A stretch of DNA of 64,000 bases, taken from positions 186,001 to 250,000 of IMG/VR virus record IMGVR_UViG_3300042868_005134. One strand, written 5' to 3'. Under the pieces are notes generated by a model. That model saw only the letters and a list, made by a program, of their open reading frames with translations, did not search any database and was not told the origin of the DNA. Both the position numbers and the translations under genes were made by a program. This document shows, in pieces, positions 34,034 through 53,722 of this stretch (position 1 is the stretch's first letter; every line of letters begins with the position of its first letter).

Positions 34034-34257
34034 TAGATTTAGAAACATTCGAATTACGTAAACTACAAACAGAAGCTGCTCGCGCATTGTCTTCGATGGA
34101 AGCAACTAATGACAATATATACAAATTTAACCAAGTTGCTAGACATGACAGTCATTTATGGTATAAAGCTGTAATTAATTGGTATATAGAACAACATGGG
34201 GGCCTCCCAAGCGAGATAGGTCCAGGCTCAACAGTTAAAATGGTAACAACACAATGA
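34030..34257 (+). CDS. Small hypothetical protein (75 aa)
   Basis: SD AGGA; ATGA overlaps with both the methyltransferase and the first radical SAM gene. Confidence 0.7.
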   Translation: MIDLETFELRKLQTEAARALSSMEATNDNIYKFNQVARHDSHLWYKAVINWYIEQHGGLPSEIGPGSTVKMVTTQ

Positions 34258-35417: not shown

Positions 35418-35418
35418 T

Positions 35419-36401: not shown

Positions 36402-37679
36402 ATGACACCAAATACTATATTTCCAATTAAGTCTGAAACTGCCTGTTTATTAAAATGGGCCTGGAGCAGTCTTTTCGTATATCAAGGAACTTCTAGCTCA
36501 TGCCATCGAACAATACATTCTTCGTTTGGTCCAGAGTTAATAGGCACTTTTCACAATACTCCTGAAAAAATCAAAGAACGTGAATTAATGCTTAACGGTA
36601 AATGGCCAGGTCGCGGGTGTGAATATTGCCGAGATATTGAAGCCGCCGGCGGCACAAGTGATCGTATGAGAGAATTGGAAGGGTTGTCGGATCCACTTTA
36701 CCGAGGATTTATCCCGCCAGAATTAAAAGATAATCCCTTTGCTACAGTTGTCACTCCTACTATGTTAGAAGTTTACTTTAGTAATTTGTGTAATATGACA
36801 TGCTTGTATTGCGGCCCAGATTTAAGTACACAATGGGTCGCTGAAAATAATATTCATGCAGGTGATCGTGGTAAACAGCAATTTAAAATACATCAAGAAC
36901 GACAAAATTTATATCCTGAGCGTTTAAAATATTTTTGGGAATGGTTATCAAACAACTATCAAAGTCTCAGGATGTTTAACGTATTAGGTGGCGAGCCATT
37001 TTACCAAGATGAAACAGAACAATGTATTGAATTTTGGAATAACAATCCCAATCCCAAAATGCATTTTAGCATATTTTCTAATTTAAAAGTTAAGCCTGAA
37101 AAATTTAAAAAAATATTAGATAAATTTGATTATCTTATTAAAAATAAAAAAGTAAGTTCTATAGGGATAACAGCTAGTCTTGATTGTTGGGGCGTCGAAC
37201 AAGAATATGTGCGATGGGGCGTAGATTTAAATGAGTGGGAAACTAATTTCAAAACTCTTGTTTACGATTACCCTAGCATAAAGATTTGCGTTAACAGTAC
37301 AATAAATTGCCTTTCTATAAAAACTATGCCCGAATTACTAACTAGAATTAATGATTGTAATTCTTATCGTAAAAGTATTACAGGTAATGATATTATTCAT
37401 AGTTTTAATATGTTAACGGAACCAAACTTCATGAATGCTAAGATTTTCCCGGCAGGGTTCTTCGATGAAGATTTTAAAAAGATTTTAACTGTTATGCCTT
37501 CAGCCACAGCAAGAGAGCAGAGTCTAAAAGAGCATATGGAAGGTATTTGGAAAGCATACAATTCTGCCAAACACGATCCTAGTCAAATTGCTTTGTTAAA
37601 AGAAGTACTCGACGAAGCAGACAAGCGTCACAAAACCAATTGGCAAACAATTTTTCCTTGGTTAACGGACATACATTAA
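36402..37679 (+). CDS. Radical SAM enzyme with N-terminal auxiliary Cys domain (type B)
   Basis: N-terminal 'ACLLKW...SSCHR...GCEYC'; core CNMTCLYC; 'GGEP'. Confidence 0.9.
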   Translation: MTPNTIFPIKSETACLLKWAWSSLFVYQGTSSSCHRTIHSSFGPELIGTFHNTPEKIKERELMLNGKWPGRGCEYCRDIEAAGGTSDRMRELEGLSDPLYRGFIPPELKDNPFATVVTPTMLEVYFSNLCNMTCLYCGPDLSTQWVAENNIHAGDRGKQQFKIHQERQNLYPERLKYFWEWLSNNYQSLRMFNVLGGEPFYQDETEQCIEFWNNNPNPKMHFSIFSNLKVKPEKFKKILDKFDYLIKNKKVSSIGITASLDCWGVEQEYVRWGVDLNEWETNFKTLVYDYPSIKICVNSTINCLSIKTMPELLTRINDCNSYRKSITGNDIIHSFNMLTEPNFMNAKIFPAGFFDEDFKKILTVMPSATAREQSLKEHMEGIWKAYNSAKHDPSQIALLKEVLDEADKRHKTNWQTIFPWLTDIH

Positions 37680-37682
37680 ATA
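37677..37682 (+). promoter_or_regulatory. T4-late-like TAAATA box
   Basis: Overlaps the upstream stop codon; 4 nt before the SDR ATG. Confidence 0.5.
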
Positions 37683-37686
37683 CTAG

Positions 37687-38232
37687 ATGAAAATACTTAT
37701 TACTGGAAATCCAAATTTTGGCTTAGCATCTGAATTGTTTAAGCTATACCCTGACGCAACATTCATATCGAGAGAAAGTGGATATGATTTAACCACCCGA
37801 GAAGGTTATCGTAAACTAGGTGAGATAGTCGCAGAATACGATATTTTTATCAATTCAAGTGCGTTATGGAAATTTAATCAAACGCTAGTACTTGATGCTG
37901 TATATAAAAAATGTGTAGAGATCAAACACAATATGCGAATCATTTGTATAGGTAGCACTACAGATAGAGTTAAGAAAGCAACATCGTGGATTTATAACGC
38001 TGAGAAAAAAGCACTACGTGATTATTCAAATAGTTTAAGTTTAACAGGTGTGTGGGATTCAGGCCCAACAGTCTCGCTAATCAGTTTTGGCAGTTTGTCT
38101 AATGTACAAGAAAAACACCCAGGCCGTGTTTGTTTAGAACTATCACGTGCCGCATCTTATATTAAATGGTTGATTGACCAGCCTTCGGATATATGTATTA
38201 ATGAAATCAGTATTGACCCTTTACAACATTAA
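37687..38232 (+). CDS. Short-chain dehydrogenase/reductase (SDR)
   Basis: 'KILITG...GL' Rossmann start, 'FINSSA', 'IGS', catalytic YxxxK ('YNAEK'). Confidence 0.75.
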   Translation: MKILITGNPNFGLASELFKLYPDATFISRESGYDLTTREGYRKLGEIVAEYDIFINSSALWKFNQTLVLDAVYKKCVEIKHNMRIICIGSTTDRVKKATSWIYNAEKKALRDYSNSLSLTGVWDSGPTVSLISFGSLSNVQEKHPGRVCLELSRAASYIKWLIDQPSDICINEISIDPLQH

Positions 38233-39545
38233 TGACTAAAACCTTTTGTCCTATTCCTTGGAATTTCCAAGCAGTCCGTAATAACGGAGATATTCGTGTA
38301 TGTTGTCAAGCCAACGTAACAGAAAATCAAGGTGTGGTTAGACATGCGGACGGTACTCCGTTCAACGCTGGTAAAGATGATATGGAAATTGCTCGAAATG
38401 CCACACTGATGAAAGAAGTTCGTATGAACATGTTGACAGGCGAGTGGAGTAAAGAATGCGGCCGGTGCCAACAAGAAGAAGCAAGTGGCTTAAACAGTCG
38501 TAGACAATACGAACTAGATAACTGGAAATTTAGTATAGATGATGCTCGCAACATTACAGACGTTGATGGCACCATTAAAAATAGACAGTTAGAATATTAT
38601 GATTTACGATTTGGTAACTTATGTAACTTAGCGTGTCGTATGTGTGGTCCAACCGATAGTCATACTTGGTATGAACAATGGACAGAATATCATGGTAGTA
38701 CAGATTACGCAGACACACACGGCATTGTAAAACTAATTAAAAACTCTAAAGGCAGATTAAGTACTGAGGATTATGATTGGCATAACAGTGAAACATTCTG
38801 GCAGCAAATAGAAGCTAATATTCCAAATATCAAACATGTCTATATGGCCGGCGGTGAACCAATGATGATTGAACGTCATTATGAGTTCTTACAAAAGTGT
38901 ATCGATATGGGTCAAAGTAACAAGATGATTATCGAGTACAATACTAACATGAGTAATTTGCCACAACGTGTATTGGATATGTGGACGCAGTTTAAGCAAG
39001 TTCGTGTTGGCGCCAGTATGGATGGTATGGGCGATGTAGTAGAATATCAGCGCTGGCCTCTAAAGTGGAGCCAGGCATATAAGAACTTACAAAAGCTAGA
39101 TGAATATGCACAAAATAATTCCAATATACTTGCTTGGTTAGCGTGTACAGTAACAGCATATAACATTTGGCACATACCTCGTTTTATGAAGTGGAAATTA
39201 CAAAGTAGTGGATTTAAAAAGATTAATAGTACAAAAAAACGTCCTATCATAACACATCATGTGGCACATGGTCCAAAACGTGTTAATGTACGGGTATTGC
39301 CAGCTGACATGAAACAAGAGATAGTTGAATACTATGCTCGTTGGATAGAAGAATTTAAAACAGAATATCCAGAAGATATTGCTAAGAACGCTGAAAATAT
39401 TTTAAACAGCATTACCAAGTATATGTTAGATGCAGATTACAGTGATAAACTTCCTGAGTTTATTAAGTTTACAAAGTATTTAGACAGTGCCAGAGATCAG
39501 CATATTGTTGATATAGCACCAGAATTTAAACGATTATTTGATTAA
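38232..39545 (+). CDS. Radical SAM enzyme with N-terminal twitch-like domain (type A)
   Basis: 'FCPIPW...G.IRVCC...ECGRC'; core CNLACRMC; 'GGEP'; 'YNTN'. Confidence 0.9.
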   Translation: MTKTFCPIPWNFQAVRNNGDIRVCCQANVTENQGVVRHADGTPFNAGKDDMEIARNATLMKEVRMNMLTGEWSKECGRCQQEEASGLNSRRQYELDNWKFSIDDARNITDVDGTIKNRQLEYYDLRFGNLCNLACRMCGPTDSHTWYEQWTEYHGSTDYADTHGIVKLIKNSKGRLSTEDYDWHNSETFWQQIEANIPNIKHVYMAGGEPMMIERHYEFLQKCIDMGQSNKMIIEYNTNMSNLPQRVLDMWTQFKQVRVGASMDGMGDVVEYQRWPLKWSQAYKNLQKLDEYAQNNSNILAWLACTVTAYNIWHIPRFMKWKLQSSGFKKINSTKKRPIITHHVAHGPKRVNVRVLPADMKQEIVEYYARWIEEFKTEYPEDIAKNAENILNSITKYMLDADYSDKLPEFIKFTKYLDSARDQHIVDIAPEFKRLFD

Positions 39546-40658
39546 GATTTCAGAAGGTCTGTCTTTAGTTCTTCGTTGTCTTATAAAATGGTTACCAGTA
39601 GCATCTACACACAAGTTACTTGGTTTGGCAGCATCTGGCGCACCTATACCTAATATAGCAACAGGGTAATTATCTTCGGTAATGCCATGCTTGCTAGATA
39701 ACCAGTTAGAAATATTGCTCGGATTATAACATCCGCAAAATCCTGTCTTGTATCCTAGTAATTGTGCGGCAAGTGCTACCGCGCCTGCACTAATACCCGT
39801 ATTCAAACTTTGATGTCTTGTTAGTTCTATATCGGTATCGTATTCGAGATCGAACAGTCTATTATAAGTTTCGTCTTTATTAGCAGTCCACATAAAAACA
39901 ACTGGTGCAAGTAACTGTGTGTTATAGTTGTGCTGATTTCTGGAAGTATATGCTGTACCAATCTTTAATACTGGCATCCTTGGCAATCCGTGATTAATAA
40001 CATCGATTATAATATTAGTAAGCTGACCAATGTCGGTAGCTTCTGCTGTAATGTTAGGAATTAAAACTTGAGGTTCAGCAAGCTGAATAGCTGGTATTTT
40101 AACATTAACTAAGATATATTCTGTAATCAATCTTTGAATAAATCTATGTGCTTCAAGTTCGGCAATTTTCCTAACTTGTAAGTTTCCGTAGATATCAAAA
40201 TACTTTGATACTATGTTACGTGTGTACTTATTAGAATCTAGTTTTAGATCTTTAATGTAAGCTTCTACAACAAATCCAATATCTCTGTAACATTTGTGCG
40301 CCTCGTATACAAATCCATCAAACGGCGCACTATTAGTATCTACTTTATGCTTGATCCAAGCAGCACCTTCTCTTTTAATAAATTCTTTATTTTCTTTTAG
40401 TAATCGAACAGCGTTAGGGGCTAAATTCGGCATATTATCCGGAATATAACCTTCACTATGACAAATTTCAAATAATTCTTCTTTTGCGTCTGCGTCAGTA
40501 AATGCGATACATTTAAAGAAGTTAACATTCTGCTTGGTAGGAGTTCCATTAGCTACTTGTAACAGTAAGTTTAAATTTTCTTCAGATACGCTGTCGCTAA
40601 TCCAGTTTCTTTGACAAGCATTAATTGATGTTAGGGCTGATAATAGTTCGGTATTCAT
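39534..40658 (-). CDS. Nitroreductase-like (FMN-binding) protein with a large internal insertion
   Basis: N-terminal 'CQRNW..DSV....L..LL..A..TPTKQN' and C-terminal 'TGISAG...LAA..LGYKTGF...LGIG' follow the nitroreductase pattern. Confidence 0.65.
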   Translation of the reverse strand: MNTELLSALTSINACQRNWISDSVSEENLNLLLQVANGTPTKQNVNFFKCIAFTDADAKEELFEICHSEGYIPDNMPNLAPNAVRLLKENKEFIKREGAAWIKHKVDTNSAPFDGFVYEAHKCYRDIGFVVEAYIKDLKLDSNKYTRNIVSKYFDIYGNLQVRKIAELEAHRFIQRLITEYILVNVKIPAIQLAEPQVLIPNITAEATDIGQLTNIIIDVINHGLPRMPVLKIGTAYTSRNQHNYNTQLLAPVVFMWTANKDETYNRLFDLEYDTDIELTRHQSLNTGISAGAVALAAQLLGYKTGFCGCYNPSNISNWLSSKHGITEDNYPVAILGIGAPDAAKPSNLCVDATGNHFIRQRRTKDRPSEILIK

Positions 40659-40659
40659 G

Positions 40660-41916
40660 TTAGATTCCTTCTTTAATATTTATCATCCACGGAAATACCT
40701 GCCGCCAATTTGTATTTCTGCGTTGGTCCATTTTATCTAAGAATATTTTTAATTCTTTGACTTTTTCATAATTTGTAGGAGTTTCGATAATTTCTTTAAA
40801 AATAGCATTTACATAATTGCTGTATTCTGCGTCATTAAACATCTGCCCATTTAATTCTTGTATTTCTCTTATTTTGTCAATATATATCTCACCTGGAATA
40901 TTATGTGGATCTAAAATTTCAGGAGAAATACATTTATTGTAATTTACACTGATTTTTTTACCCTTACATGTGTTGTTCCAATGAATGACTTTTTTAATTA
41001 ATTCTGGAGTACTATGTATCGATAATGCTGACACTGTCCAGTTCATTGTGGGAATAATTTCAGGACATTCGTATATTAAGTATTCCATATTTTCTGTGAA
41101 TGTCGCAAGATCCAATCCTGTTCTAATATATTCTGATTCTATCCCCCAGCAGTCAATACTAGCAGTTAGCTCAACAGTATTACAAGTTTTTACTAATTGT
41201 TTAATTTTTTCCATCTGTTTTTTAAAAAGAGATGGTTTAATTTGCATGTTAGAAAAGATCTCAACATCGAGATCTGGATTTGGATGTGCAATCATCCAAT
41301 CTATACAATCGAAAGTTTCTTGTTGAATTAATGGTTCGCCACCTAGTATATGAAATTCTCGTAAATCACAATAATGTTTTTCCATCCACACATAAAACTC
41401 AGCTAACCTTGTTTTATAAGTCACATCATCCATTGCGATAGAATTTAAAAAAGAGTTATTACTAGGCCCGTATTGTTCCTCTTCCAACACCCACGAACTA
41501 CTTAAAAATGGCCCACAATATAAGCATTTTAAATTACATTTATTATTGAAATAAATTTCTAACATTGTAGGATTTACTGAAGTTTGTGTTGGGTTAGTGT
41601 ACAATTCTTTAGGTACATATTTCTCGTTATACGGTCTGGACAACCAATTTTTTCTATCACTAAAATTACTATATGTTTCTTGATCCTTACAGCTTTCGCA
41701 CCCGCGTCCTGGCCACTCGTTTTTTAACATTTTTTCTCTATCTATAATTACTTCGGGCGTATTGTGAAAATTTTCAATATTATCTACTTTAACATTTTCT
41801 ACCCTGTGACAAGAACTAGACGTACTAGTCCATAAGTATAAACTACTCCATGCCCATTTTAATAAACAAGCCTGTTCAGATTGGATTGGGAACCATTTTT
41901 TAGCATTTTCAGTCAT
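40660..41916 (-). CDS. Radical SAM enzyme (type B), close paralog of 36402-37679
   Basis: 'ACLLKWAWSSL...SSSCHR...WPGRGCESC'; core CNLKCLYC; 'GGEP'. Confidence 0.9.
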   Translation of the reverse strand: MTENAKKWFPIQSEQACLLKWAWSSLYLWTSTSSSCHRVENVKVDNIENFHNTPEVIIDREKMLKNEWPGRGCESCKDQETYSNFSDRKNWLSRPYNEKYVPKELYTNPTQTSVNPTMLEIYFNNKCNLKCLYCGPFLSSSWVLEEEQYGPSNNSFLNSIAMDDVTYKTRLAEFYVWMEKHYCDLREFHILGGEPLIQQETFDCIDWMIAHPNPDLDVEIFSNMQIKPSLFKKQMEKIKQLVKTCNTVELTASIDCWGIESEYIRTGLDLATFTENMEYLIYECPEIIPTMNWTVSALSIHSTPELIKKVIHWNNTCKGKKISVNYNKCISPEILDPHNIPGEIYIDKIREIQELNGQMFNDAEYSNYVNAIFKEIIETPTNYEKVKELKIFLDKMDQRRNTNWRQVFPWMINIKEGI

Positions 41917-41920
41917 GAAA

Positions 41921-41950
41921 TATTTATCGATAAAATACAGCGGTTAAATA
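41921..41950. promoter_or_regulatory. Divergent pair of late-like promoters
   Basis: TATTTAT (41921-41927) and TAAATA (41945-41950), each 4 nt from its ATG. Confidence 0.65.
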
Positions 41951-41954
41951 TAGT

Positions 41955-43358
41955 ATGAATAAAATATCCAAAACATTTTGTATTTTACCCTGGGTACATT
42001 TAAGTACCCGACCTGATGGTAGTATGAGAGTTTGCTGTACAGCCAATGCTAGTAGCGTTGGCCAGACAAACGATAGAGAACACGGCGGCATGGTAGGTGT
42101 TCTTAAGACAGACGCCGGCAAACCTAACAACTTAAATGTTAGCGATTTCAAAAGTGCATGGAACAGTTCCTATATGCGAAATGTTCGCAAACAAATGCTT
42201 AACGGTGAACAGCCTCCTAGTTGTTTAAAATGTTATAAAGAAGAGGCAGCTGGACATAATAGTAAACGTATGTGGGAAACTAAGTATTGGAGTCAACGTG
42301 TAAGTGTTAATAAGTTAATTGAAGATACTGCAGAAGATGGTAGTGTTCCACCGCAACTTGCCTATATCGATTTACGCTTTGGAACTAAATGCCAGCTAGC
42401 GTGTGTAATGTGTAGTCCTCATGATAGTTCTGGCTGGATTAAAGATTATAAAGCCATCTTTTCTGAAGTAGAAAATGCCAGTTTAAAACAAACCATGTTA
42501 TGGACTGACAAAGGCTCTACCAACGGTAGTAGTTATAATTGGCACAAACAAAACCCTGTGTTCTGGCAACAGTTTTATGAACAAATTCCTAATATGCAGC
42601 AAATTTATTTCGCTGGCGGAGAAAGTTTAATTATTGAAGAACACTACGAAATTCTTGAAGAATGTATTCGTCAAGGTCACGCCAAGAACTTAGAGTTACG
42701 TTACAACTCAAACGGCGTTGAATGGCGCGATGATCTATTTGACTTATGGAAACATTTTAAACTAGTGAGATTCCATTACAGTGTAGACAGCATTGGAGAA
42801 ATGAATGCCTATATTCGTTACCCTAGTATATGGGAACGTACTAAGGAAGTATTTCACATTCTTGATAAGCAAACAGGCAATAATGTTGAAGTTACAGTAG
42901 CTTGTGCTGTACAAGCTCTTAATATCTATTACTTGCCTGACTTTTTAAAGTGGAAATTAGAAGAGGGGTTTACAAAAATTAATATGTGGCCGTTTGGTGC
43001 AGGCGGCGTTAATTATCACTTTGTTTATCACCCGCCGCACCTTAATGTTAAAGTACTTCCTAAAGAATTCAAAGAAGCTTGTCGTAAAAAATACGAAGAG
43101 TTTTATTCATGGTGGGAAGCAAATTGGGAAAAAGGCATTCCTAGTTGGCATAAAGGTAAAGTAACATATGAAGATTGGCGTAAAGCAGAATATGGTATTA
43201 GCCGTTTGGAAGGTATGTTAAAATTTATGGAAAGTGAAGATTGGAGTAATCGATTGCCTGAAACTAAAGAATTTTTAGATTTATGCGACAAACAACGAAA
43301 TCTTAACTTTAGTGAAATTTTTCCAGAAATGAAGGATATTTTTAATGGAACAACATAA
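41955..43358 (+). CDS. Radical SAM enzyme with N-terminal twitch-like domain (type A)
   Basis: 'FCILPW.H...DG.MRVCC...SCLKC'; core CQLACVMC; 'GGES'. Confidence 0.9.
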   Translation: MNKISKTFCILPWVHLSTRPDGSMRVCCTANASSVGQTNDREHGGMVGVLKTDAGKPNNLNVSDFKSAWNSSYMRNVRKQMLNGEQPPSCLKCYKEEAAGHNSKRMWETKYWSQRVSVNKLIEDTAEDGSVPPQLAYIDLRFGTKCQLACVMCSPHDSSGWIKDYKAIFSEVENASLKQTMLWTDKGSTNGSSYNWHKQNPVFWQQFYEQIPNMQQIYFAGGESLIIEEHYEILEECIRQGHAKNLELRYNSNGVEWRDDLFDLWKHFKLVRFHYSVDSIGEMNAYIRYPSIWERTKEVFHILDKQTGNNVEVTVACAVQALNIYYLPDFLKWKLEEGFTKINMWPFGAGGVNYHFVYHPPHLNVKVLPKEFKEACRKKYEEFYSWWEANWEKGIPSWHKGKVTYEDWRKAEYGISRLEGMLKFMESEDWSNRLPETKEFLDLCDKQRNLNFSEIFPEMKDIFNGTT

Positions 43359-44172
43359 AAATTTAGAATGGGTCCCTGGCGATCCTATCACAAAAGAAAT
43401 GCTAGAGGTTAAGTCAGAAGATTACGCATTGTGGAAAAAAACGTGGGGCGATAGCTACTGTGTTGAAAATGTATTTGACGATGATGAGTTGACCTGGTTA
43501 GAAGATTTAATGTATAGAAATCATAAAAGTCGACGTGTTAAGAAAAATGGAACGCTTCACTTTAATGTAGATAACAGACTGATACAAGATAAATTTTTTG
43601 ATAAATTAAAATCAGTTATTCCTGAATTGGAAAATACTGAATTATGGGAAGGCAATTTTTTAATAACTGCTACTCCATATAATATACATATCGACACCGG
43701 TAATCACCAAGTGATGAGTAATGCTACCTATGTTCCGGGGAAGCAATTTATTATTCCTCTTTGGTTCTGTCACGGACACAAAGAGACAGATTATCCTGAA
43801 CACGGCACCGCTATTTTTAAAAATCGATTTATCATGTACGGAACAAATTTTGCCAAAGGAGACGCAAAATATGACACAAATGTTTTTTATACAGTACGTG
43901 ACTATAAGGATTTAGTATGCTATAATAAAGATGGCTCCGTGTGGAACGTTGATTGGTCTAAGCGTAGTGTAAGCGATAACGACTATATTAGATACTTTGA
44001 TCACTTTAAAAGAGAATGGCTAGACGGTTTTGAATTAGAAGCAGTCTACCAATGGAAACGTGGAAGTATTATTGTATTTGATAGATCACAAGCGCACACT
44101 GGCATCAATTTTATGAAAAACAAGGTAACACTGAAATGTGGGTTATCTATGATGACAACAGTTAAAAGATAA
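43345..44172 (+). CDS. Putative 2OG-Fe(II) oxygenase-fold protein
   Basis: HxD ('IHIDTG') and distal His ('WKRGSIIVFDRSQAH'), matching the HxD...H facial triad in a double-stranded beta-helix pattern. Confidence 0.6.
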   Translation: MEQHKNLEWVPGDPITKEMLEVKSEDYALWKKTWGDSYCVENVFDDDELTWLEDLMYRNHKSRRVKKNGTLHFNVDNRLIQDKFFDKLKSVIPELENTELWEGNFLITATPYNIHIDTGNHQVMSNATYVPGKQFIIPLWFCHGHKETDYPEHGTAIFKNRFIMYGTNFAKGDAKYDTNVFYTVRDYKDLVCYNKDGSVWNVDWSKRSVSDNDYIRYFDHFKREWLDGFELEAVYQWKRGSIIVFDRSQAHTGINFMKNKVTLKCGLSMMTTVKR

Positions 44173-45236
44173 TGAAATATTTGCCGAACCCAAAAAGACT
44201 TCAATTTGAACTTAGCAATGTATGTAATCTACATTGTTTAGGTTGTGTGCGAACTGAAACTACACTTAATTCAGTTAAAGCTGCTATCGGCGATCCTACT
44301 TATCTTTCAGTGGATACTTTTTATAAAATAATAACAGATAGCGCACTTGATAGTATTGTGGATTTAGATTTTTGTGGCAGAATAGATGACCCATTAGCAC
44401 ATCCGGATTTTCTAAAAATATTAGAAATGGCAATCGAACATAAATCTTTTAAAATTTTCATTCACACAAATGGCGGATTGCGTAATCCTGAATATTGGAA
44501 AAAACTCGGAAATTTGTTAAAAGGTACAGACCATGTTGTTATGTTTAATGTAGATGGTCTCGAAGATACTAATCACATTTATAGACAAGGGAGTGTCTGG
44601 AGCAATATTGTAGCTAATGCCAAATCTTATATTTCTACAGGTGCTAATGCTACGTGGCAATATATAGAATTTCCTTGGAACAAACATCAGATTCCGGAAG
44701 CATTGTTATTAAGTAAAGAATTGGGCTTTCAAAGTTTTAACGTTCGTCAGGACCGTAGTCGTATACAACATAAATCACTAGAACAAATAGTAGTTATGAA
44801 ACAACGAACACAAATACCAGAACAAAATAGAGACACTTTTTTATTACATCCAAGATACGATACTAGTTATGAAATCACATGTATGAATAAAGTAGACAAC
44901 ATGTATTTTATAGATCATACTGGTAAGCTATGGCCCTGCTGCTTTATTCCAAACGGTTTTATAGAAGATAATAATAAGTTAGCTCAGAAAGAATATTTAC
45001 AAGACAGAATATATGGCAGCTACTCGGATACTACATGGAATGACTGTAACTTACACGATGTATCTTCTATTATAAATCATAAATTTTATACAGAAGATTT
45101 AGTAGATAGTTGGAATTCAGAACAACACGGCATTGAAACTAAAGACAGAATTTTTAGATGTACTGAAACCTGCTCTTCTCGCGCATCCGCCATTAAGCCA
45201 TCTGCAAATTCTACAACTAAAAAATTTAATCAATGA
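44172..45236 (+). CDS. Radical SAM enzyme (type C)
   Basis: CNLHCLGC; 'CGRIDDP'; 'HTNGG'; C-terminal 'TC...FID..G..WPCC...CTETC'. Confidence 0.9.
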   Translation: MKYLPNPKRLQFELSNVCNLHCLGCVRTETTLNSVKAAIGDPTYLSVDTFYKIITDSALDSIVDLDFCGRIDDPLAHPDFLKILEMAIEHKSFKIFIHTNGGLRNPEYWKKLGNLLKGTDHVVMFNVDGLEDTNHIYRQGSVWSNIVANAKSYISTGANATWQYIEFPWNKHQIPEALLLSKELGFQSFNVRQDRSRIQHKSLEQIVVMKQRTQIPEQNRDTFLLHPRYDTSYEITCMNKVDNMYFIDHTGKLWPCCFIPNGFIEDNNKLAQKEYLQDRIYGSYSDTTWNDCNLHDVSSIINHKFYTEDLVDSWNSEQHGIETKDRIFRCTETCSSRASAIKPSANSTTKKFNQ

Positions 45237-46300
45237 TAGCAAAAGATCAAATCAAAATAGTTCATGTTGAAGCTAGTAGTAGATGTAACAGCAGATGCCC
45301 TATGTGTAGTAGATTCACTGCTGATGGATTCGTACAGCCTGAATTAAACGAATTGGATCTAACCGGCGAAGTTTTTTATAAGCTATTTACTAAGGATTTT
45401 ACTAGTCAGCTAGAGCATGTCTATTTTAGCGGAGTATACGGCGATCCTTGCTTGAATAAATTGTTGCCTGAATTTGTTAACTACTTAATGGATAACGGCT
45501 GTAAAAGTGTTAGCATAGATACTAACGGCGGATATCGTAGTGAAGAATGGTGGGCTAAACTTGCTAGAAAAGACGTTCTAATCAATTTTGCGTTGGACGG
45601 CACAGATAATGAAACGTTGGATAAGTATCGTATTGGAGTAGTGTACGACAAAGTATATGCTAATATGAAAGCATATATAGAAGCTGGCGGCAATGCTCAG
45701 TGGAACTTTATTGTATTTAAACATAACGAACATCAAGTAGACATAGCAAAGCAATTGGCATTGGATATGGGCGCAAAGTTTAGACTTAAGGTAACACAAA
45801 AGTTCCGTGGTCGAAAAAATCATAAAGTTATGATAGATGGTGAACTACAACATACATTAGAGCCACCAGATCAAGAATCATTCAGACATCCGAATATAGG
45901 AACTATTGATCATATTCCTATTAGTATTTTTAAGTTTAAAGATTATTCAAGATTATCTCATCTTAACGGAAACAAAGTCACATGTAAAATTCAACAACGA
46001 CAGGAAGTTTACTTAACAAGTATTGGCTTGCTATTACCCTGTTGCTATCTTGCTACTTATACACATGATAGTCCAGGATCCGCACAGTTTACTAGTTTGT
46101 ATAATTTAGAAAAGTTCGATTTAAAATTACTCTCCGTTGTTGAAATTTTAGAAAATTTTAAACCAATAAGTAACAAATGGAATGATACCATAGATGATGG
46201 CAATTTAATTATTTGTTTAGGCACTTGTGGCAATAAAGAAAACACTACTCTTTATCATGATAACAATTTGAAAAAAGAAAACATTTTAAAACAGCAATGA
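45233..46300 (+). CDS. Radical SAM enzyme (type C)
   Basis: CNSRCPMC; 'SGVYGDP'; 'DTNGG'; C-terminal 'TCK...LPCC...CLGTC'. Confidence 0.9.
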   Translation: MIAKDQIKIVHVEASSRCNSRCPMCSRFTADGFVQPELNELDLTGEVFYKLFTKDFTSQLEHVYFSGVYGDPCLNKLLPEFVNYLMDNGCKSVSIDTNGGYRSEEWWAKLARKDVLINFALDGTDNETLDKYRIGVVYDKVYANMKAYIEAGGNAQWNFIVFKHNEHQVDIAKQLALDMGAKFRLKVTQKFRGRKNHKVMIDGELQHTLEPPDQESFRHPNIGTIDHIPISIFKFKDYSRLSHLNGNKVTCKIQQRQEVYLTSIGLLLPCCYLATYTHDSPGSAQFTSLYNLEKFDLKLLSVVEILENFKPISNKWNDTIDDGNLIICLGTCGNKENTTLYHDNNLKKENILKQQ

Positions 46301-47658
46301 CAGCAAAATCTAAGACATTTTGTATATTACCTTTTATACATATTCAAGTTAAACCTAACGGTCAAATAAAGCCGTGTTGCCGATTCGATTTTGTACACGA
46401 CGACTACATTGACAAAGACTGGACTGCTAAAAATGGATCAGCGTATCATGTTTTTAACAAGTATAATATCTCTAACGGTTCTACTCTAACCGAAGCCATG
46501 ACTAGCAATTTATGGAACGATGTTAGAAACAATATGCTAAATGGAAAACCAGTTAGTGGATGTAGGAAGTGTTATACCGCAGAAACTTTTAACGGCAGAT
46601 CTATGCGTGTGCATGAAAATTACGCTAGGAATGATCAAATACAGGACAGTTTATCTAGCAGTATTGAACCATTAAAAATAAAATATCTTGAAATGACTTT
46701 CGGTAATTACTGTAATTTAAAGTGTAGGACATGTGCTGGGGATTTATCGAGTACATGGCACGAAGAAGAAGCATTGTTAGCAAAGGTTTACCCTGGACGA
46801 TATAGCTCACCTAAAGTTTTAAACATCCCGTTTAATTGGAAACCCGAAGATTTTGTTAATATAGAAGAAATTAAATTCACAGGCGGCGAGCCTATGATAC
46901 ATCCTGATTTTTTAAAATTAATGGATATGCTAATTGAAATTGATGTTGCTAAAAATATTGCTCTAGATGTTTTTACAAACTGTAGCTGGATTCCCGGCGG
47001 GAAATTTTTTAAGCGGTTAACTAAATTTAAACAAGTAAAAATTAGTCTAAGTATAGATGGCGTTGGAAAAACTAACGATTATATCAGAACGCCTAGTGAC
47101 TGGCGTGTTGTCGATAGTGTAGTTGATAGTTGGCTTGCTCAGGAAGCAGCTGATACTAATAAGATTCAAATAACTTGGAACCCAACTATCAACATTTACA
47201 ATATTTTAGAAATAGATAACATGATAGATTGGTGGGATAACAAACAAAACGGACATTTTCCCAATCGCTCATGGCCTAATCTAACGGAAAAAGATTATAA
47301 AGAAGATCATAACATATCAAGTTTTAGATTGATTTTTAATATACTACAAGATCCTAAGTATTTGTCAATCTCCAATTTGCCACAATCTGCTAAAGAATTA
47401 GCTAATCGTACAATAAAATCTATATATGACAAATACGATTCTTGGGATATGGCAGAAAATCCTCGTAAAGAAATTTTTAATAAAAAAATGGAAGCAATTA
47501 GAGGAGCATTAAATTCCACAGCAAACATAGAAATGTTAAAATTATTTGCTAGTTATACTGAAGATTTAGATAAATTACGTACACAGTCTTTAAAAGATTC
47601 CTTACCATTATTGTATAAAGAATTAGAAGGGCACGTGGACTATACAGGAAAATTGTAA
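46297..47658 (+). CDS. Radical SAM enzyme (type A)
   Basis: 'FCILPF.H...NG.IKPCC...GCRKC'; core CNLKCRTC; 'GGEP'. Confidence 0.9.
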   Translation: MTAKSKTFCILPFIHIQVKPNGQIKPCCRFDFVHDDYIDKDWTAKNGSAYHVFNKYNISNGSTLTEAMTSNLWNDVRNNMLNGKPVSGCRKCYTAETFNGRSMRVHENYARNDQIQDSLSSSIEPLKIKYLEMTFGNYCNLKCRTCAGDLSSTWHEEEALLAKVYPGRYSSPKVLNIPFNWKPEDFVNIEEIKFTGGEPMIHPDFLKLMDMLIEIDVAKNIALDVFTNCSWIPGGKFFKRLTKFKQVKISLSIDGVGKTNDYIRTPSDWRVVDSVVDSWLAQEAADTNKIQITWNPTINIYNILEIDNMIDWWDNKQNGHFPNRSWPNLTEKDYKEDHNISSFRLIFNILQDPKYLSISNLPQSAKELANRTIKSIYDKYDSWDMAENPRKEIFNKKMEAIRGALNSTANIEMLKLFASYTEDLDKLRTQSLKDSLPLLYKELEGHVDYTGKL

Positions 47659-48902
47659 TGAGCAAGACTTTTTGTGTTATGCCATTCTGCCATGTCAATA
47701 TTAAACAGGAAGGTAAGGTAAGTGCTTGTTGGAGATATCCTGATAAAATTGGAGATTATACCACACAGAGTATACATGAAGTTTGGAATGGTTCTGAGAT
47801 AAAAGAATTACGTAGACAACTACTCAACGACGAGCGTCCTGTAGGATGCCGTAGTTGTTGGGATATGGAAGATAGCGGAGTTCGTAGTACACGATCACAA
47901 ACAGCAGTCGATTATAAAGACATAATGAATATTGAAAAAGCAAAAGCAGTAATTACTGAAGATTTTGCTATGCCCGACGAAAATTTAAAAAGTATCGAAC
48001 TTAGATTTGATAATATTTGTAATTTAATGTGTAGGCACTGTAGTCCTGACTATAGCAGTAAGTGGGAAGCGGCAGTTAAACGAGATGAAAAACTACAAAG
48101 TAAAATGATTCAGTTTGGCACTTTTAGAAAAAGTGATGAGCATATAAATCTTAACCAGAAAATTATTGATGAAATTGGTGGTACTATTTCTTCAAATTTA
48201 ACAGAGATTATGCTAGCAGGCGGCGAACCTTTATATCACGAACGCCATTATGATTTTATTAAATCGATGTTACCGAATGCTAAAAATATAAAACTTAGTT
48301 ATAATAGTAATTTAACCACATTAGATTACAAGGGTAATTCCATTTTAGATTTATGGAAGCACTTTAAAAAGGTTAATTTGCGTGTTAGTATTGATGGCGA
48401 TCCTAGTTGTTATCAATATGTTAGAGCACATGACGGCTTGACTTTAATTGAAAAAAACATTACACTAGTACATAACGTGCCTAATACTAGAGTTAGTGCA
48501 ACATGTACTACTAGTTTATTGAATATAACAAGATTGATATCGATTATAGAATATTTTTTGTCGTTAGGCGCATATTTTCATGCCAGTATAGTTCAATACC
48601 CACGGGCGTTGAATCCTAAGTTGTTACCACTAGAATTAAAAGAAAAAATAACAACTGATTGGACTAACTGGATTGCCGACATTGACACAAACATTGTAAA
48701 CTGTGTAAAGTTATTGCCAACTACAGACGTTGAATCTCATAAGAAAAACATATTGAAGTTTGGAAATATGATAGTTGATTATATGAATTCGGAAAACTGG
48801 CACGAACACTGGCATGAATTTGTGGATTATTCTGCGGTGCTAGATGACCATTTTAAAACAGACTTGTATAGTGTGTATCCTGAATTTAAATTTGTAAAGT
48901 GA
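47658..48902 (+). CDS. Radical SAM enzyme (type A)
   Basis: 'FCVMPFCH...G.VSACW...GCRSC'; core CNLMCRHC; 'GGEP'. Confidence 0.9.
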   Translation: MSKTFCVMPFCHVNIKQEGKVSACWRYPDKIGDYTTQSIHEVWNGSEIKELRRQLLNDERPVGCRSCWDMEDSGVRSTRSQTAVDYKDIMNIEKAKAVITEDFAMPDENLKSIELRFDNICNLMCRHCSPDYSSKWEAAVKRDEKLQSKMIQFGTFRKSDEHINLNQKIIDEIGGTISSNLTEIMLAGGEPLYHERHYDFIKSMLPNAKNIKLSYNSNLTTLDYKGNSILDLWKHFKKVNLRVSIDGDPSCYQYVRAHDGLTLIEKNITLVHNVPNTRVSATCTTSLLNITRLISIIEYFLSLGAYFHASIVQYPRALNPKLLPLELKEKITTDWTNWIADIDTNIVNCVKLLPTTDVESHKKNILKFGNMIVDYMNSENWHEHWHEFVDYSAVLDDHFKTDLYSVYPEFKFVK

Positions 48903-48906
48903 AAAT

Positions 48907-50226
48907 ATGGAAGATTGGAAAAATACGTATTGTTCTAAATCCTGGACTGATGTTAATGTAGACTTTTCAAGCGAGTTTGTTAAAAATTGCTGTAAATCGA
49001 AGCCTATTAAATTTGTACCTAATTTAGATAAAACTTTCTTTGAGTTCTCTCCAGAGTTACTTAAACGCAAGACTGATAGCTTACAAGGAGTACAAAATGA
49101 AGATTGTCATTTTTGTTGGAAAGAAGAAGGTAAGCGTGTAACTTATAGAGATGTACATAATAAATGGACACCTGAATTTATAGAATTAAATCGTGATAAC
49201 TTATTATCTACTGATAAATCATTTGCGAATTATATTGAAGTTAAGTTCTCCAATACTTGCGATATGGCTTGTTTATATTGCGGCCCTAATTTTAGTAGTA
49301 AAATAGCCATAGAAGAAAAAGTTCGAATTAAAAGTGTGCCGTTAGCATCTGAATTTGAAGCTTTTAAAGAATTTTCAGATCCGCTAATTAAAAATGCAGT
49401 TGAAATTAATAGAGAATCTATTGATAATAGTGTGTGGGATAATACACAATTACGATTTGTATTCTTAGGAGGCGAACCCACGTTGATAGATCAATTTTAT
49501 GATTTTATTGAACATATTGTATCTAGAGTTGAACATCATGCTCAACTAGCAAACTGGAAGCACAAAATGAAAAATATCCGTCTTGAAATTGTCACTAATG
49601 GTAATACTACCCCGGCATTAATGGACAAGTTTTTTAAATTATTATACAGTACAAATTTTGAATGGACAATTGGGATAAGTAACGAATCTTTTGGGCATGA
49701 TGCTGAATTGATCAGACATGGGTTAAATTGGGAACGATTTCAAACTAATTTTAAAAAATATATTTCTGTTCCTAAAAAAATTGACAGCATTAATTTAGCA
49801 CCAACTCTTAATATTTTTAGTTTAAAAACATTTCATCTCTACATGGCATGGGTACATGAGCAATTCGATAATCAGTTAAAATTAACAGGTGTTTGTCCAG
49901 CTTTTACATGGCACGGCAATTTTGTAACAGATCCGGTATTAGACATTAAAGTATTGCCAGTTGAATATAGAAAGTACATTGATCTTGCCATTGAAGTTGC
50001 TGAACGTGAAAATAATCCTAAATTTAAGAATAAAAAAAGTACAATTAAATTTTTAAATCAGATGAAAGATAGGATTGGCACAACTGATCCTGAATCAGAT
50101 GATGCTGTATGGTATAGAGAACGAGCGAGAGATTGGCTTGTGATGAAAGAAAAAAAGAAAGGAGTTAGTAATCTAACACCTTTACTATTGAATATCGAAT
50201 ATCATGATTATAAAAGGTATCTGTAA
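48907..50226 (+). CDS. Radical SAM enzyme (type B-like)
   Basis: 'YCSKSW...NCCK...DCHFC'; core CDMACLYC; 'GGEPT'; 'VTNG'. Confidence 0.88.
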   Translation: MEDWKNTYCSKSWTDVNVDFSSEFVKNCCKSKPIKFVPNLDKTFFEFSPELLKRKTDSLQGVQNEDCHFCWKEEGKRVTYRDVHNKWTPEFIELNRDNLLSTDKSFANYIEVKFSNTCDMACLYCGPNFSSKIAIEEKVRIKSVPLASEFEAFKEFSDPLIKNAVEINRESIDNSVWDNTQLRFVFLGGEPTLIDQFYDFIEHIVSRVEHHAQLANWKHKMKNIRLEIVTNGNTTPALMDKFFKLLYSTNFEWTIGISNESFGHDAELIRHGLNWERFQTNFKKYISVPKKIDSINLAPTLNIFSLKTFHLYMAWVHEQFDNQLKLTGVCPAFTWHGNFVTDPVLDIKVLPVEYRKYIDLAIEVAERENNPKFKNKKSTIKFLNQMKDRIGTTDPESDDAVWYRERARDWLVMKEKKKGVSNLTPLLLNIEYHDYKRYL

Positions 50227-53721: not shown

Positions 53722-53722
53722 A

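What the first reader, a model, noticed from the sequence alone, without database searches (positions are those of the whole stretch)
36402..50226. Permuted radical-SAM architecture: auxiliary twitch/SPASM-like Cys domain placed N-terminal to the core
Seen: in seven of the enzymes the C...G...CC(or CH/CW)...CxxC pattern lies in roughly the first 60-110 residues, before the CxxxCxxC motif. Known: SPASM and twitch domains in characterised enzymes (anSME, BtrN, MoaA) are C-terminal. Inference: this is a permuted subfamily. The CC, CH and CW variants may alter ligation of the auxiliary cluster and leave an open iron site for substrate.
Basis: partly seen in the sequence, partly recalled or inferred. 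Interest (0 to 1): 0.65.

Follow-up and report, generated by a model that had tools for sequence, protein, structure and literature searches.

The report
Radical-SAM enzymes with N-terminal twitch domain
Seven neighbouring genes of a 383-kb marine T4-like phage encode radical-SAM enzymes whose extra iron-sulfur ("twitch") domain sits in front of the catalytic core instead of behind it; the layout is real, but it is already a curated protein family (NCBIfam N_Twi_rSAM), and no studied member turned up in the paper searches.

Summary
Seven ORFs between 36402 and 50226 carry Cys-x17/18-Cys ... CxxC in their first 64-93 residues, ahead of CxxxCxxC. All seven match NCBIfam NF033640 "N_Twi_rSAM" end to end. 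Six score above the 170-bit cut-off and one scores 158.

The N-terminal roughly 90 residues are a true twitch domain:
- Pfam SPASM hits lie at the N-terminus.
- A profile alignment puts all four Cys on the four Cys of BtrN residues 166-237.
- In an exhaustive fold search of 48,161 chains, BtrN 163-247 is the clear top hit (Z 4.3; next 2.4).

The four Cys are essentially invariant in 553 homologues. The "open iron site" idea is therefore not supported. A fully ligated, BtrN-like electron-transfer cluster is more likely.

On a tree built from the core alone, the N-twitch proteins form one group (SH-aLRT 97).

The genes belong to a 12-gene radical-SAM cassette beside tail-fibre and GDP-sugar genes. 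Similar cassettes are common in large aquatic phages and in Bdellovibrionota, which carry 3-20 copies per genome. The substrate is unknown; sugar or glycan tailoring is my best guess.

Verdict: new members of a known, uncharacterised family.

The parts
36402..37679 (+). N_Twi_rSAM paralogue 1 (425 aa). The twitch domain is residues 10-114 (nt 36429-36743), with C15, C34(H35), C73, C76. The radical-SAM motif starts at C130 and GGE at 196.
   Evidence: NF033640 232 bits, profile positions 1-396 of 398. N-domain HMM E 1.7e-24. Cys positions.
38232..39545 (+). N_Twi_rSAM paralogue 2 (437 aa). The twitch domain is residues 1-115 (nt 38232-38576), with C6, C24(C25), C76, C79. The radical-SAM motif starts at C131.
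   Evidence: NF033640 382 bits. Pfam Radical_SAM at 127-296. N-domain HMM E 6.7e-28.
40660..41916 (-). N_Twi_rSAM paralogue 3 (418 aa). It is the only one on the minus strand. The twitch domain is residues 12-112 (nt 41581-41883), with C17, C36(H37), C73, C76. The radical-SAM motif starts at C127.
   Evidence: NF033640 238 bits. N-domain HMM E 1.5e-23. The gene upstream of its 5' end runs the other way, so the twitch cannot be the tail of a preceding gene.
41955..43358 (+). N_Twi_rSAM paralogue 4 (467 aa). The twitch domain is residues 3-132 (nt 41961-42350) and has a roughly 20-residue insert. Cys are C9, C27(C28), C90, C93. The radical-SAM motif starts at C146.
   Evidence: NF033640 424 bits, the best of the seven. 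Pfam SPASM at residues 9-94, 25.0 bits against a cut-off of 21.5.
46297..47658 (+). N_Twi_rSAM paralogue 5 (453 aa). The twitch domain is residues 3-123 (nt 46303-46665), with C9, C27(C28), C89, C92. The radical-SAM motif starts at C139.
   Evidence: NF033640 311 bits. Pfam SPASM at residues 9-93, 20.3 bits, just under the cut-off.
47658..48902 (+). N_Twi_rSAM paralogue 6 (414 aa), the protein that was modelled. The twitch domain is residues 1-106 (nt 47658-47975), with C6, C24(W25), C64, C67. The radical-SAM motif is C121/C125/C128 and GGE is at 188-190. The core runs from about 108 to 320, followed by a C-terminal helical region at 325-414.
   Evidence: NF033640 314 bits. Pfam SPASM at residues 6-68, 38.4 bits, covering profile positions 1-67 of 67. 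AF2 model pLDDT 93.6, pTM 0.90. The core matches BlsE and SkfB at Z 13.3 and anSME at Z 12.7. The N-domain matches BtrN 163-247.
48907..50226 (+). Divergent N_Twi_rSAM paralogue 7 (439 aa). The twitch domain is residues 3-108 (nt 48913-49230), with C9, C28(C29), C67, C70. It lacks the G before Cys2. The radical-SAM motif starts at C118.
   Evidence: NF033640 158.1 bits, below the 170 cut-off, covering profile positions 2-360. N-domain HMM E 1.6e-22. The four Cys align with those of the other six.
44172..46300 (+). Two canonical-order radical-SAM paralogues (44172-45236 and 45233-46300). CxxxCxxC is at residue 18. A twitch-like C-x18-CC ... CxxxC lies C-terminal to the core: C237/C256/C257/C330/C334 in the first and C251/C270/C271/C328/C332 in the second.
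   Evidence: Pfam Radical_SAM at the N-terminus. The best or second-best NCBIfam hit is the core part of NF033640, profile positions 107-310. Cys positions. Profile-profile match to the N-twitch is weak: probability 38.7%, 33 columns around the hairpin and Cys2.
34254..36369 (.). Two further radical-SAM genes just upstream of the stated range. 34254-35417(+) is canonical order, with C284-x18-C303C304 ... C371xxxC375. 35419-36369(-) belongs to another radical-SAM family.
   Evidence: Pfam Radical_SAM, Cys positions, PHROG radical-SAM families.
50226..51398 (+). Twelfth radical-SAM gene of the cassette (390 aa). CxxxCxxC is at residue 44 and the C-terminus is Cys-rich. It belongs to a different family from N_Twi.
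   Evidence: Pfam Radical_SAM 57.9 bits. It falls in family 1 of the clustering, with 96 members in 58 sources (57 viral loci plus the window).
29318..34033 (+). Six accessory ORFs with no Pfam or NCBIfam match. Their homologues recur next to radical-SAM cassettes in other viral contigs.
   Evidence: No hits. Homologues of 31510-33101 occur in 26 sources, of 33098-34033 in 24, and of 29318-30968 in 10 (85 sources: 84 viral loci plus the window). 33098-34033 has a weak methyltransferase-like lead.
37687..38232 (+). Small Rossmann/SDR-like accessory protein (181 aa) conserved beside the radical-SAM genes.
   Evidence: Weak SDR hit, E 0.0014. Homologues occur in 32 of the 85 sources and in 11 bacterial loci.
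39534..40658 (-). Nitroreductase-like accessory protein (374 aa).
   Evidence: Pfam Nitroreductase 27.6 bits. Homologues occur in 23 of the 85 sources.
43345..44172 (+). Accessory protein (275 aa), probably a 2OG-Fe(II)-oxygenase-like cupin. It has an HxD ... H pattern that I read directly from the sequence.
   Evidence: No Pfam hit. Atlas neighbours include DUF6445 clusters, nearly all viral. Homologues occur in 21 of the 85 sources.
52723..56515 (-). Adjacent nucleotide-sugar genes: GDP-mannose 4,6-dehydratase, a DegT-type aminotransferase, an NAD epimerase/dehydratase, and a nucleotidyltransferase fused to a mannose-6-P-isomerase-type cupin.
   Evidence: Pfam: GDP_Man_Dehyd 362.9 bits, DegT 178.7, Epimerase 159.6, CTP_transf_like plus MannoseP_isomer.

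Best explanation
The seven genes encode members of the curated but biochemically uncharacterised family NF033640 (N_Twi_rSAM). These are radical-SAM enzymes in which the single-cluster 'twitch' module is placed N-terminal to the CxxxCxxC/GGE core and is followed by a family-specific helical C-terminal region. The module has one Cys before a beta-hairpin, one Cys after it, a helix, and then CxxC.

Shown here: the homology and fold of the N-domain to the BtrN twitch; the invariance of four Cys; intact SAM-cluster and GGE motifs in all seven proteins; and a single grouping of N-twitch proteins on a tree built from the core alone.

Inferred: the four Cys fully ligate one auxiliary [4Fe-4S] cluster. 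As proposed for BtrN and anSME, that cluster would take an electron from a substrate radical (oxidative chemistry) rather than bind substrate through a free iron. The extra Cys, His or Trp after Cys2 is not a cluster ligand.

Inferred with lower confidence (about 0.35-0.45): the seven paralogues act with five other radical-SAM enzymes, oxygenase-like, SDR-like and nitroreductase-like proteins as a tailoring cassette for a sugar, nucleotide-sugar or surface glycan. The cassette lies in the hypervariable 'host recognition' region of a 383-kb T4-like marine phage.
For: Family membership
- There are full-length NF033640 matches of 232, 382, 238, 424, 311, 314 and 158 bits against a cut-off of 170. 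A six-frame search of the whole virus record finds the same seven.

Twitch identity
- Pfam SPASM hits lie at residues 6-94.
- C-terminal segments of SPASM families align to residues 6-91: TIGR04340 positions 253-310, TIGR04303 244-301, NirJ2 239-317, SbtM 432-480.
- BtrN 166-237 aligns to residues 5-71 with all four Cys matched.
- The isolated N-domain model has pLDDT 95.6. The six best-ranked Foldseek matches are all twitch/SPASM radical-SAM structures: BtrN twice, anSME twice, SkfB and PqqE.
- VIA aligns residues 1-88 to BtrN 163-247 with 78 residues aligned, rmsd 3.4 A and Z 4.3.
- In an exhaustive comparison with 48,161 chains, only three reach Z 2 or more. BtrN is first and the next is 2.4.
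- The secondary-structure order is Cys, hairpin (12-15 and 20-22), Cys, helices, then CxxC at the start of helix 62-72. This matches the canonical twitch description in PMC6231123.

Ligation
- Four Cys are conserved in 523-548 of 553 homologues, whereas the position after Cys2 is C 411, H 43, W 35, Y 16.
- The BtrN twitch uses four Cys for a fully ligated [4Fe-4S] cluster (PMC6231123).

Core
- The full-length model has pLDDT 93.6 and pTM 0.90.
- The best structural matches are BlsE Z 13.3, SkfB Z 13.3, anSME Z 12.7, then viperin and MoaA at about 12.

Single origin
- On a tree built from the core only, the 45 N-twitch rows lie on one side of a branch with SH-aLRT 97.

Context
- There are 12 radical-SAM genes in 34254-51398.
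- They lie downstream of baseplate, giant virion-protein and tail-fibre genes and next to GDP-sugar genes.
- In 84 viral loci plus the window, 506 + 96 radical-SAM proteins co-occur with the same accessory families.
- Annotated neighbours include GT7 with a ConA-like domain, GT2, carbamoyltransferase, DegT, UDP-glucose dehydrogenase, APS kinase and many 2OG/Asp-hydroxylase-like proteins.
- In a Bdellovibrio isolate the gene sits next to UDP-glucose dehydrogenase-type, epimerase and DegT genes.
- PMC7029224 reports radical-SAM gene cassettes together with glycosyltransferase/LPS genes in the host-recognition cluster of T4-like pelagimyophages.
Against: - No Fe-S content has been measured. A conserved Cys need not ligate, as SkfB Cys333 shows, and SkfB's twitch held a [2Fe-2S] cluster (PMC6231123).
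- Fold-match scores for the small N-domain are modest in absolute terms (Foldseek E 0.019, Z 4.3).
- The position of the N-domain relative to the active site could not be measured.
- The sugar hypothesis is only contextual. Most neighbours have no annotation. Sugar genes are not regular neighbours in the bacterial loci: tblastn with the window's sugar enzymes found them in 1 of 77 loci.
- Asp/Arg-hydroxylase-like neighbours would fit protein substrates equally well.
- The seventh paralogue is below the family cut-off.
Confidence: 0.8

Rival explanations
1. One reading: variation at the CC/CH/CW position changes ligation of the auxiliary cluster. Some paralogues would then have a site-differentiated iron that binds substrate, as in MoaA or CteB.
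For: The residue after Cys2 does vary (C 74%, H 8%, W 6%). His can ligate Fe-S clusters. MoaA and CteB show that open sites exist in this superfamily, and SkfB shows that a conserved Cys can fail to ligate (PMC6231123).
Against: Four other Cys are invariant across 20-28%-identical paralogues and about 550 homologues. They align one-to-one with the four Cys of the BtrN twitch. The variable position can be W, Y, G, P or F, none of which is a ligand, so it is dispensable for cluster binding.
Confidence: 0.12
2. The N-terminal Cys4 module does not bind a [4Fe-4S] cluster in vivo. It would instead be a Zn-binding or [2Fe-2S] structural remnant of a twitch domain.
For: Cys4 sites with CxxC are also typical of zinc ribbons. 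SkfB's twitch held a [2Fe-2S] cluster (PMC6231123). No metal data exist for this family, and the literature searches found nothing.
Against: The sequence and fold similarity is specifically to Fe-S-binding twitch/SPASM modules, and in an exhaustive search to nothing else. The Cys spacing copies BtrN (C-x17-C ... CxxC).
Confidence: 0.08
3. The cassette tailors proteins or peptides rather than sugars. Candidates are the adjacent tail fibres or giant virion protein, or an unrecognised RiPP-like precursor.
For: The cassette sits directly after tail-fibre genes. The commonest annotated neighbours are Asp/Arg beta-hydroxylase-like and 2OG oxygenases, at 14 of 148. The best structural matches of the core include the peptide enzymes SkfB, CteB and anSME. 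SPASM/twitch enzymes are mainstays of RiPP pathways (PMC10114670).
Against: No RRE/PqqD-like domain was detected in any of the seven. In the model the N-terminus is the twitch itself. I saw no Cys-rich or repeated small precursor ORF; the only tightly packed small ORF (34030-34257, 75 aa) has no Cys. Sugar enzymes recur as neighbours.
Confidence: 0.25
4. The enzymes act on nucleotides or DNA. They would make viperin-like modified nucleotides, deazapurines or hypermodified bases for phage DNA protection or counter-defence.
For: There are weak secondary NCBIfam hits to prokaryotic viperin and MoaA for all seven (E from 8e-7 to 6e-3, viperin in every one), and viperin and MoaA are structural matches at Z about 12. 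QueC-like neighbours occur in some loci. ThyX lies nearby at 56523-57203.
Against: These hits cover only the generic core and lie far below the family cut-offs. QueC-like genes are rare neighbours, at 2 of 148. The cassette sits in the structural/host-recognition region, not the nucleotide-metabolism region.
Confidence: 0.1

Closest known systems
NCBIfam NF033640 'N_Twi_rSAM' (twitch domain-containing radical SAM protein)
   Same: Six of the seven proteins match end to end above the curated cut-off. The Cys pattern and the domain order (twitch, core, helical tail) are the same.
   Different: The seventh paralogue (48907-50226) scores 158 against a cut-off of 170 and lacks the conserved Gly before Cys2. 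The paper searches found no characterised member of the family. The setting is unusual: seven copies in one phage cassette.
BtrN (butirosin 2-deoxy-scyllo-inosamine dehydrogenase; PDB 4M7S/4M7T), the archetypal twitch enzyme
   Same: The twitch module matches: Cys, hairpin, Cys, helix, CxxC, with almost the same spacing (C-x17-C ... CxxC). All four Cys align. It is the best structural match of the N-domain. Its auxiliary cluster is fully ligated by four Cys (PMC6231123). It acts on a small sugar-like substrate.
   Different: In BtrN the twitch is the C-terminal 85-90 residues, after the core; here it is the first roughly 90 residues. Sequence identity is only about 19%. The phage proteins have an extra helical region of about 90 residues at the C-terminus. 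Their substrate is unknown.
Canonical SPASM/twitch radical-SAM enzymes (anSME, SkfB, CteB, PqqE, MoaA, BlsE)
   Same: The partial TIM-barrel core, CxxxCxxC and GGE are shared. The core matches BlsE and SkfB at Z 13.3 and anSME at Z 12.7. The auxiliary-cluster module is homologous (Pfam SPASM hit).
   Different: The domain order is reversed. There are only 4-5 Cys, so this is not the seven-Cys SPASM motif. There is no N-terminal RRE peptide-binding domain. A MoaA-type open iron is not expected.
Radical-SAM gene cassettes in the 'host recognition cluster' of T4-like pelagimyophages and cyanomyophages (PMC7029224)
   Same: The genomic setting matches: a hypervariable island after the giant baseplate protein and tail fibres, mixed with sugar/LPS-type genes.
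   Different: That paper only notes the cassettes and does not describe the domain architecture. This phage is far larger (383 kb against 132-164 kb), and its cassette has 12 radical-SAM genes.

Membership tests
Radical SAM superfamily | CxxxCxxC motif for the SAM-binding [4Fe-4S] cluster | tested here: met
   Present and invariant in all seven, starting at residues 118-146.
Radical SAM superfamily | GGE SAM-binding motif and partial TIM-barrel core fold | tested here: met
   GGE is invariant. The model core at 108-385 superposes on BlsE, SkfB, anSME, viperin and MoaA at Z 12-13.3. Pfam Radical_SAM scores above its cut-off in five of the seven, below it in one (19.8 against 29.5), and gives no hit in 40660-41916.
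NCBIfam NF033640 N_Twi_rSAM | Whole-protein HMM score at or above the curated cut-off of 170 bits | tested here: met
   Six of seven score 232-424 bits over profile positions 1-398. The seventh (48907-50226) scores 158.1, which is not met for that one protein.
Twitch domain (as described in PMC6231123) | Beta-hairpin followed by a helix, with one Cys before the hairpin, one after it and further Cys after the helix | tested here: met
   In the model: C6, strands 12-15 and 20-22, C24, helices 39-56, then C64xxC67. It superposes on BtrN 163-247.
Twitch domain | Binds only one auxiliary cluster (a truncated SPASM) | tested here: inconclusive
   The sequence offers only 4-5 Cys ahead of the core, of which four are invariant. 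That is enough for one cluster. Actual metal content was not measurable.
Twitch domain | Located C-terminal to the radical-SAM core, as in all characterised members | tested here: not met
   The domain occupies residues 1 to about 110, before CxxxCxxC, in all seven proteins and in 545 of 549 homologues with both features. This is the family's distinguishing variation.
SPASM domain | Seven-Cys motif CX9-15GX4C-gap-CX2CX5CX3C-gap-C binding two auxiliary clusters | tested here: not met
   Only the first half is present (C-x17/18-C with G-x4-C, then CxxC). There is no CX2CX5CX3C motif. TIGR04085 scores 20.1 against a cut-off of 27.
Circular permutation in the strict sense | The N-terminal twitch occupies the same three-dimensional site on the barrel as a C-terminal twitch, with its cluster near the active site | not testable with these tools
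   The model is confident (pTM 0.90), but coordinates are not exposed and the aligners used are sequence-order dependent.
RiPP-type rSAM-SPASM maturases | N-terminal RRE/PqqD-like peptide-recognition domain and a nearby precursor peptide | tested here: not met
   No such domain appears in the Pfam or NCBIfam scans. The N-terminus is the twitch. No convincing precursor ORF was found.

The most novel reading that the evidence does not exclude
The N-twitch paralogues, the canonical-order paralogues beside them and the conserved accessory proteins form a multi-step radical pathway that has not been described. It would build or remodel an unusual sugar or glycan on the virion or host surface, in the host-recognition island of large aquatic phages. 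The same toolkit is expanded in predatory Bdellovibrionota. The reversed domain order would have arisen once, by fusion and re-cutting of tandem canonical genes. The frequent extra Cys after Cys2 could be a catalytic H-atom donor, as I recall for radical-SAM epimerases, rather than a cluster ligand.
Probability: 0.25. Interest if true: 0.65.

Novelty: new member of a known kind. Interest (0 to 1): 0.4.

Why it matters
All textbook SPASM/twitch enzymes carry the auxiliary-cluster module after the core. A large natural family with the module in front tests how far the position in the chain matters for cluster placement, electron transfer and substrate access. No paper found in the searched library describes such a member.

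It is also expanded in Bdellovibrionota, at 3-20 copies per genome.

These cassettes are therefore a sizeable, unexplored block of radical chemistry. They sit in the genome region that governs host recognition. Identifying one substrate would annotate hundreds of phage genes.

Tried and rejected
- **Nucleotide search for close relatives.** A megablast of the cassette against isolated phage genomes gave no match. A protein search found only four distant hits: two Vibrio jumbo phages, Ralstonia phage RsoM2USA and one marine SAG virus.
- **Literature.** Searches for an N-terminal twitch/SPASM, the family name or accession, and Bdellovibrio with SPASM found nothing relevant. The Grell/Drennan review (PMC4326806) is not held, so the BtrN ligand residue numbers 169/187/232/235 rest on my own knowledge plus the alignment.
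- **Are the C-terminal twitches of the neighbouring canonical paralogues the closest relatives of the N-twitch?** hhalign gave only 38.7% probability over 33 columns. The N-domain HMM found just 4 downstream hits. This is inconclusive, so the fusion/re-cutting origin stays a hypothesis.
- **Are sugar-nucleotide genes general neighbours in bacteria?** tblastn with the window's enzymes hit 1 of 77 loci. I therefore rejected this as a general rule and kept it only as recurring context.
- **Alignment A1 as a query for viral contigs.** It was too divergent to use.
- **Accessory ORFs.** Pfam, NCBIfam and PHROGs gave almost nothing.

Full report
**What is in the sequence**

Window 34254-51398 holds twelve radical-SAM ORFs packed end to end, many with overlapping stop and start codons.

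Seven of them carry Cys-x17/18-Cys ... CxxC within their first 64-93 residues, ahead of CxxxCxxC at residues 118-146 and GGE at 188-221. These are 36402-37679, 38232-39545, 40660-41916 (minus strand), 41955-43358, 46297-47658, 47658-48902 and 48907-50226.

The paralogues share only 20-28% identity. Even so, the four N-terminal Cys, the three core Cys and GGE are invariant columns.

It is not an ORF-calling artefact:
- Stop codons and frame changes separate each ORF from the one before it.
- 36402-37679 and 40660-41916 each have a gene on the opposite strand upstream of their 5' end.
- Single-copy homologues in bacteria have the same layout.

**What the N-terminal segment is**

All seven proteins match NCBIfam NF033640, named N_Twi_rSAM ("twitch domain-containing radical SAM protein"), over essentially the whole 398-position profile. 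The scores are 232, 382, 238, 424, 311, 314 and 158 bits against a curated cut-off of 170. A six-frame search of the whole genome record finds the same seven.

Independent lines of evidence show that the first roughly 90 residues are a twitch module:
- Pfam SPASM (PF13186) hits residues 6-68 of 47658-48902 at 38.4 bits over the full profile. It also hits residues 9-94 of 41955-43358 at 25.0 bits.
- In the NCBIfam scan the same N-terminal residues align to the C-terminal parts of several SPASM families: profile positions 253-310 of 341, 244-301 of 325, 239-317 of 326 and 432-480 of 516.
- A profile of the family, or of the N-domain alone, finds BtrN in the PDB. Residues 5-71 align to BtrN 166-237, and all four Cys fall on BtrN Cys.
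- By my own knowledge those are BtrN's auxiliary-cluster ligands, Cys169, 187, 232 and 235. PMC6231123 confirms that the BtrN twitch supplies four Cys that fully ligate a [4Fe-4S] cluster.

**Structure models**

An AlphaFold2 model of 47658-48902 built on 31 sequences is confident, with pLDDT 93.6 and pTM 0.90.

Its N-terminal part runs Cys6, beta-hairpin (12-15 and 20-22), Cys24, helices, then Cys64-x-x-Cys67 at the start of a helix. PMC6231123 describes this order as the canonical SPASM/twitch fold: a Cys before the hairpin, a Cys after it, and Cys after helix alpha2'.

The core (about 108-385) superposes on BlsE and SkfB at Z 13.3, on anSME at Z 12.7, and on viperins and MoaA at about Z 12.

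The N-domain modelled alone has pLDDT 95.6.
- The six best-ranked Foldseek matches are all twitch/SPASM radical-SAM structures: BtrN twice, anSME twice, SkfB and PqqE. The best E-value is 0.019.
- VIA-align puts residues 1-88 on BtrN 163-247, with 78 residues aligned, rmsd 3.4 A and Z 4.3.
- In an exhaustive comparison with 48,161 representative chains, only three reach Z 2. BtrN is first and the next is 2.4.

The absolute scores are modest, as expected for a small domain, but the specificity is clear.

**Twitch, not SPASM, and probably no open iron**

Only 4-5 Cys precede the core and there is no CX2CX5CX3C block. The module can therefore hold one cluster.

I built an HMM of the N-domain and ran it over all ORFs of 161 fetched loci plus the window. 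It found 553 domains, of which 545 lie upstream of CxxxCxxC and 4 downstream.

In those 553 domains the four Cys are present in 523, 544, 548 and 548 rows. Most exceptions are gaps from truncated ORFs.

The position after Cys2 is C in 411 rows, H in 43, W in 35, Y in 16, and G, P or F in a further 28. It can be a residue that cannot ligate iron.

The default expectation is a fully ligated, BtrN/anSME-type cluster. For such clusters an electron-accepting role has been proposed (PMC6231123). A MoaA-type open site is less likely.

Sequence cannot settle this. In SkfB a conserved, predicted ligand lies 12 A from the cluster (PMC6231123).

The 74% conservation of the extra Cys may mean something else, for example an H-atom donor. 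That is speculation.

**Is it a "permuted subfamily"?**

The domain order is reversed relative to every characterised SPASM/twitch enzyme (PMC6231123, PMC10114670). My paper searches found no described exception.

On a maximum-likelihood tree built only from the core region, the 45 N-twitch rows lie on one side of a branch with SH-aLRT 97. The tree had 90 rows and used the quick LG+G4 method. The label needs a single change on the tree. This is consistent with one origin; the root was not determined.

Three neighbours in the window have the canonical order: 34254-35417, 44172-45236 and 45233-46300. They carry a very similar C-x18-CC ... CxxxC after the core. Their cores hit the core part of the N_Twi profile as best or second-best NCBIfam match. 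In the fetched bacterial loci, 56 of 57 members of that co-occurring family have the pattern downstream.

Tandem arrays of such genes offer an obvious route to permutation by fusion and re-cutting. Direct profile comparison of the two twitch types was weak, however, at 38.7% probability, so this origin is unproven.

**Context**

The window is bases 186001-250000 of a 383,411-bp IMG/VR virus record that CheckV estimates as complete.

Upstream lie a T4-type baseplate wedge gene, a 4651-aa virion structural protein and several tail-fibre-like genes.

Downstream, on the other strand, lie GDP-mannose 4,6-dehydratase, a DegT aminotransferase, an epimerase, a nucleotidyltransferase-cupin fusion and ThyX.

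This matches the hypervariable "host recognition cluster" described for T4-like pelagimyophages and cyanomyophages. [quoted passage not shown]

The family is abundant in viral contigs. They include contigs of 232-457 kb.

In 84 fetched viral loci plus the window (85 sources) I counted 506 + 96 radical-SAM proteins. Recurrent accessory families are homologous to the window's 37687-38232 (SDR-like, 32 sources), 31510-33101 (26), 33098-34033 (24), 39534-40658 (nitroreductase-like, 23) and 43345-44172 (DUF6445/2OG-like, 21).

Among 148 randomly sampled non-radical-SAM neighbours, the annotated ones are:
- Asp/Arg-hydroxylase-like: 10
- 2OG oxygenases: 4
- GT7 with a ConA-like domain: 3
- APS kinase: 3
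- nitroreductase: 3
- carbamoyltransferase: 2
- DegT: 2
- UDP-glucose dehydrogenase: 2
- GT2: 2
- QueC-like: 2

Most of the 148 have no annotation.

In cellular genomes the relatives found are overwhelmingly from Bdellovibrionota, although the search pattern biases that sample. Five such genomes hold 3, 7, 10, 12 and 20 copies at E 1e-20 or better; all but one copy in each of two genomes exceed the family cut-off. One genome has a roughly 30-kb array. None of 14 control genomes has any. In a Bdellovibrio isolate the gene lies next to UDP-glucose dehydrogenase-type, epimerase and DegT genes.

**Function**

No member of the family turned up as characterised in the paper searches. Several points favour small sugar or nucleotide-sugar substrates or glycans:
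- There is no RRE domain.
- The closest twitch is that of BtrN, a sugar dehydrogenase.
- Sugar-acting enzymes (BlsE, DesII) are among the core matches.
- Sugar-tailoring genes recur nearby.

I put this at about 0.35-0.45. Protein or peptide tailoring is at about 0.25, supported by the tail-fibre neighbours, the hydroxylase-like genes, and the SkfB and anSME matches. Nucleotide or DNA chemistry is at about 0.1. Both remain open.

**Verdict**

The proteins are new members of a curated but uncharacterised family, so the architecture itself is not new.

The interesting residue is the scale and setting of these cassettes.

Noticed in passing
window 34254-51398: Twelve radical-SAM genes lie in 17 kb of a phage genome: seven N-twitch, three canonical-order twitch-like and two of another family. 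Together with 29318-34033 they form a module whose parts recur in dozens of viral contigs.
   Followed up: partly
window 4031-17986: A single 4651-aa ORF matches the giant virion structural protein family phrog_10938 (1052 bits). It is probably the VrlC-like baseplate protein that marks the start of the host-recognition cluster in T4-like marine phages.
   Followed up: partly
window 52723-57203 (minus strand): There is a GDP-sugar pathway (GDP-mannose 4,6-dehydratase, DegT aminotransferase, epimerase/reductase, nucleotidyltransferase-cupin) followed by ThyX. This looks like a perosamine-type amino-deoxy-sugar route.
   Followed up: partly
G002:C1:745000-775000; also L008 and L009: A Bdellovibrionia MAG chromosome carries about 14 N_Twi_rSAM genes in a roughly 30-kb array and 20 in the genome. 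Other Bdellovibrionota genomes have 3-12. The expansion in bacterial predators is unexplained.
   Followed up: partly
L001 and L037 (contig JAYUQP010000091.1, 178,731 bp, labelled Bdellovibrionales MAG): This contig holds a 52%-identical orthologue of 47658-48902 in a cassette laid out like the phage one. It may be a misbinned phage contig or a prophage.
   Followed up: no
window 34030-34257: A 75-aa ORF fits exactly between two genes with overlapping stop and start codons. It has no Cys and no family match, and its role is unknown.
   Followed up: partly
window 34254-35417 and 45233-46300: Both match only positions 409-664 of the 735-position profile phrog_21308. Phages therefore seem to have proteins of twice this length, possibly fused tandem radical-SAM genes. 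This bears on how the permutation could arise.
   Followed up: no
window 43345-44172: This 275-aa protein has no Pfam hit but has an HxD ... H pattern and DUF6445-related neighbours in the ESM Atlas, nearly all viral. It is probably a 2OG-Fe(II) oxygenase-like enzyme.
   Followed up: partly
window 58909-61287 (minus strand): An HNH endonuclease (phrog_1314) lies next to a CobS-like AAA ATPase (phrog_1297). The ATPase gene is, to my knowledge, typical of T4-like cyanophages.
   Followed up: no
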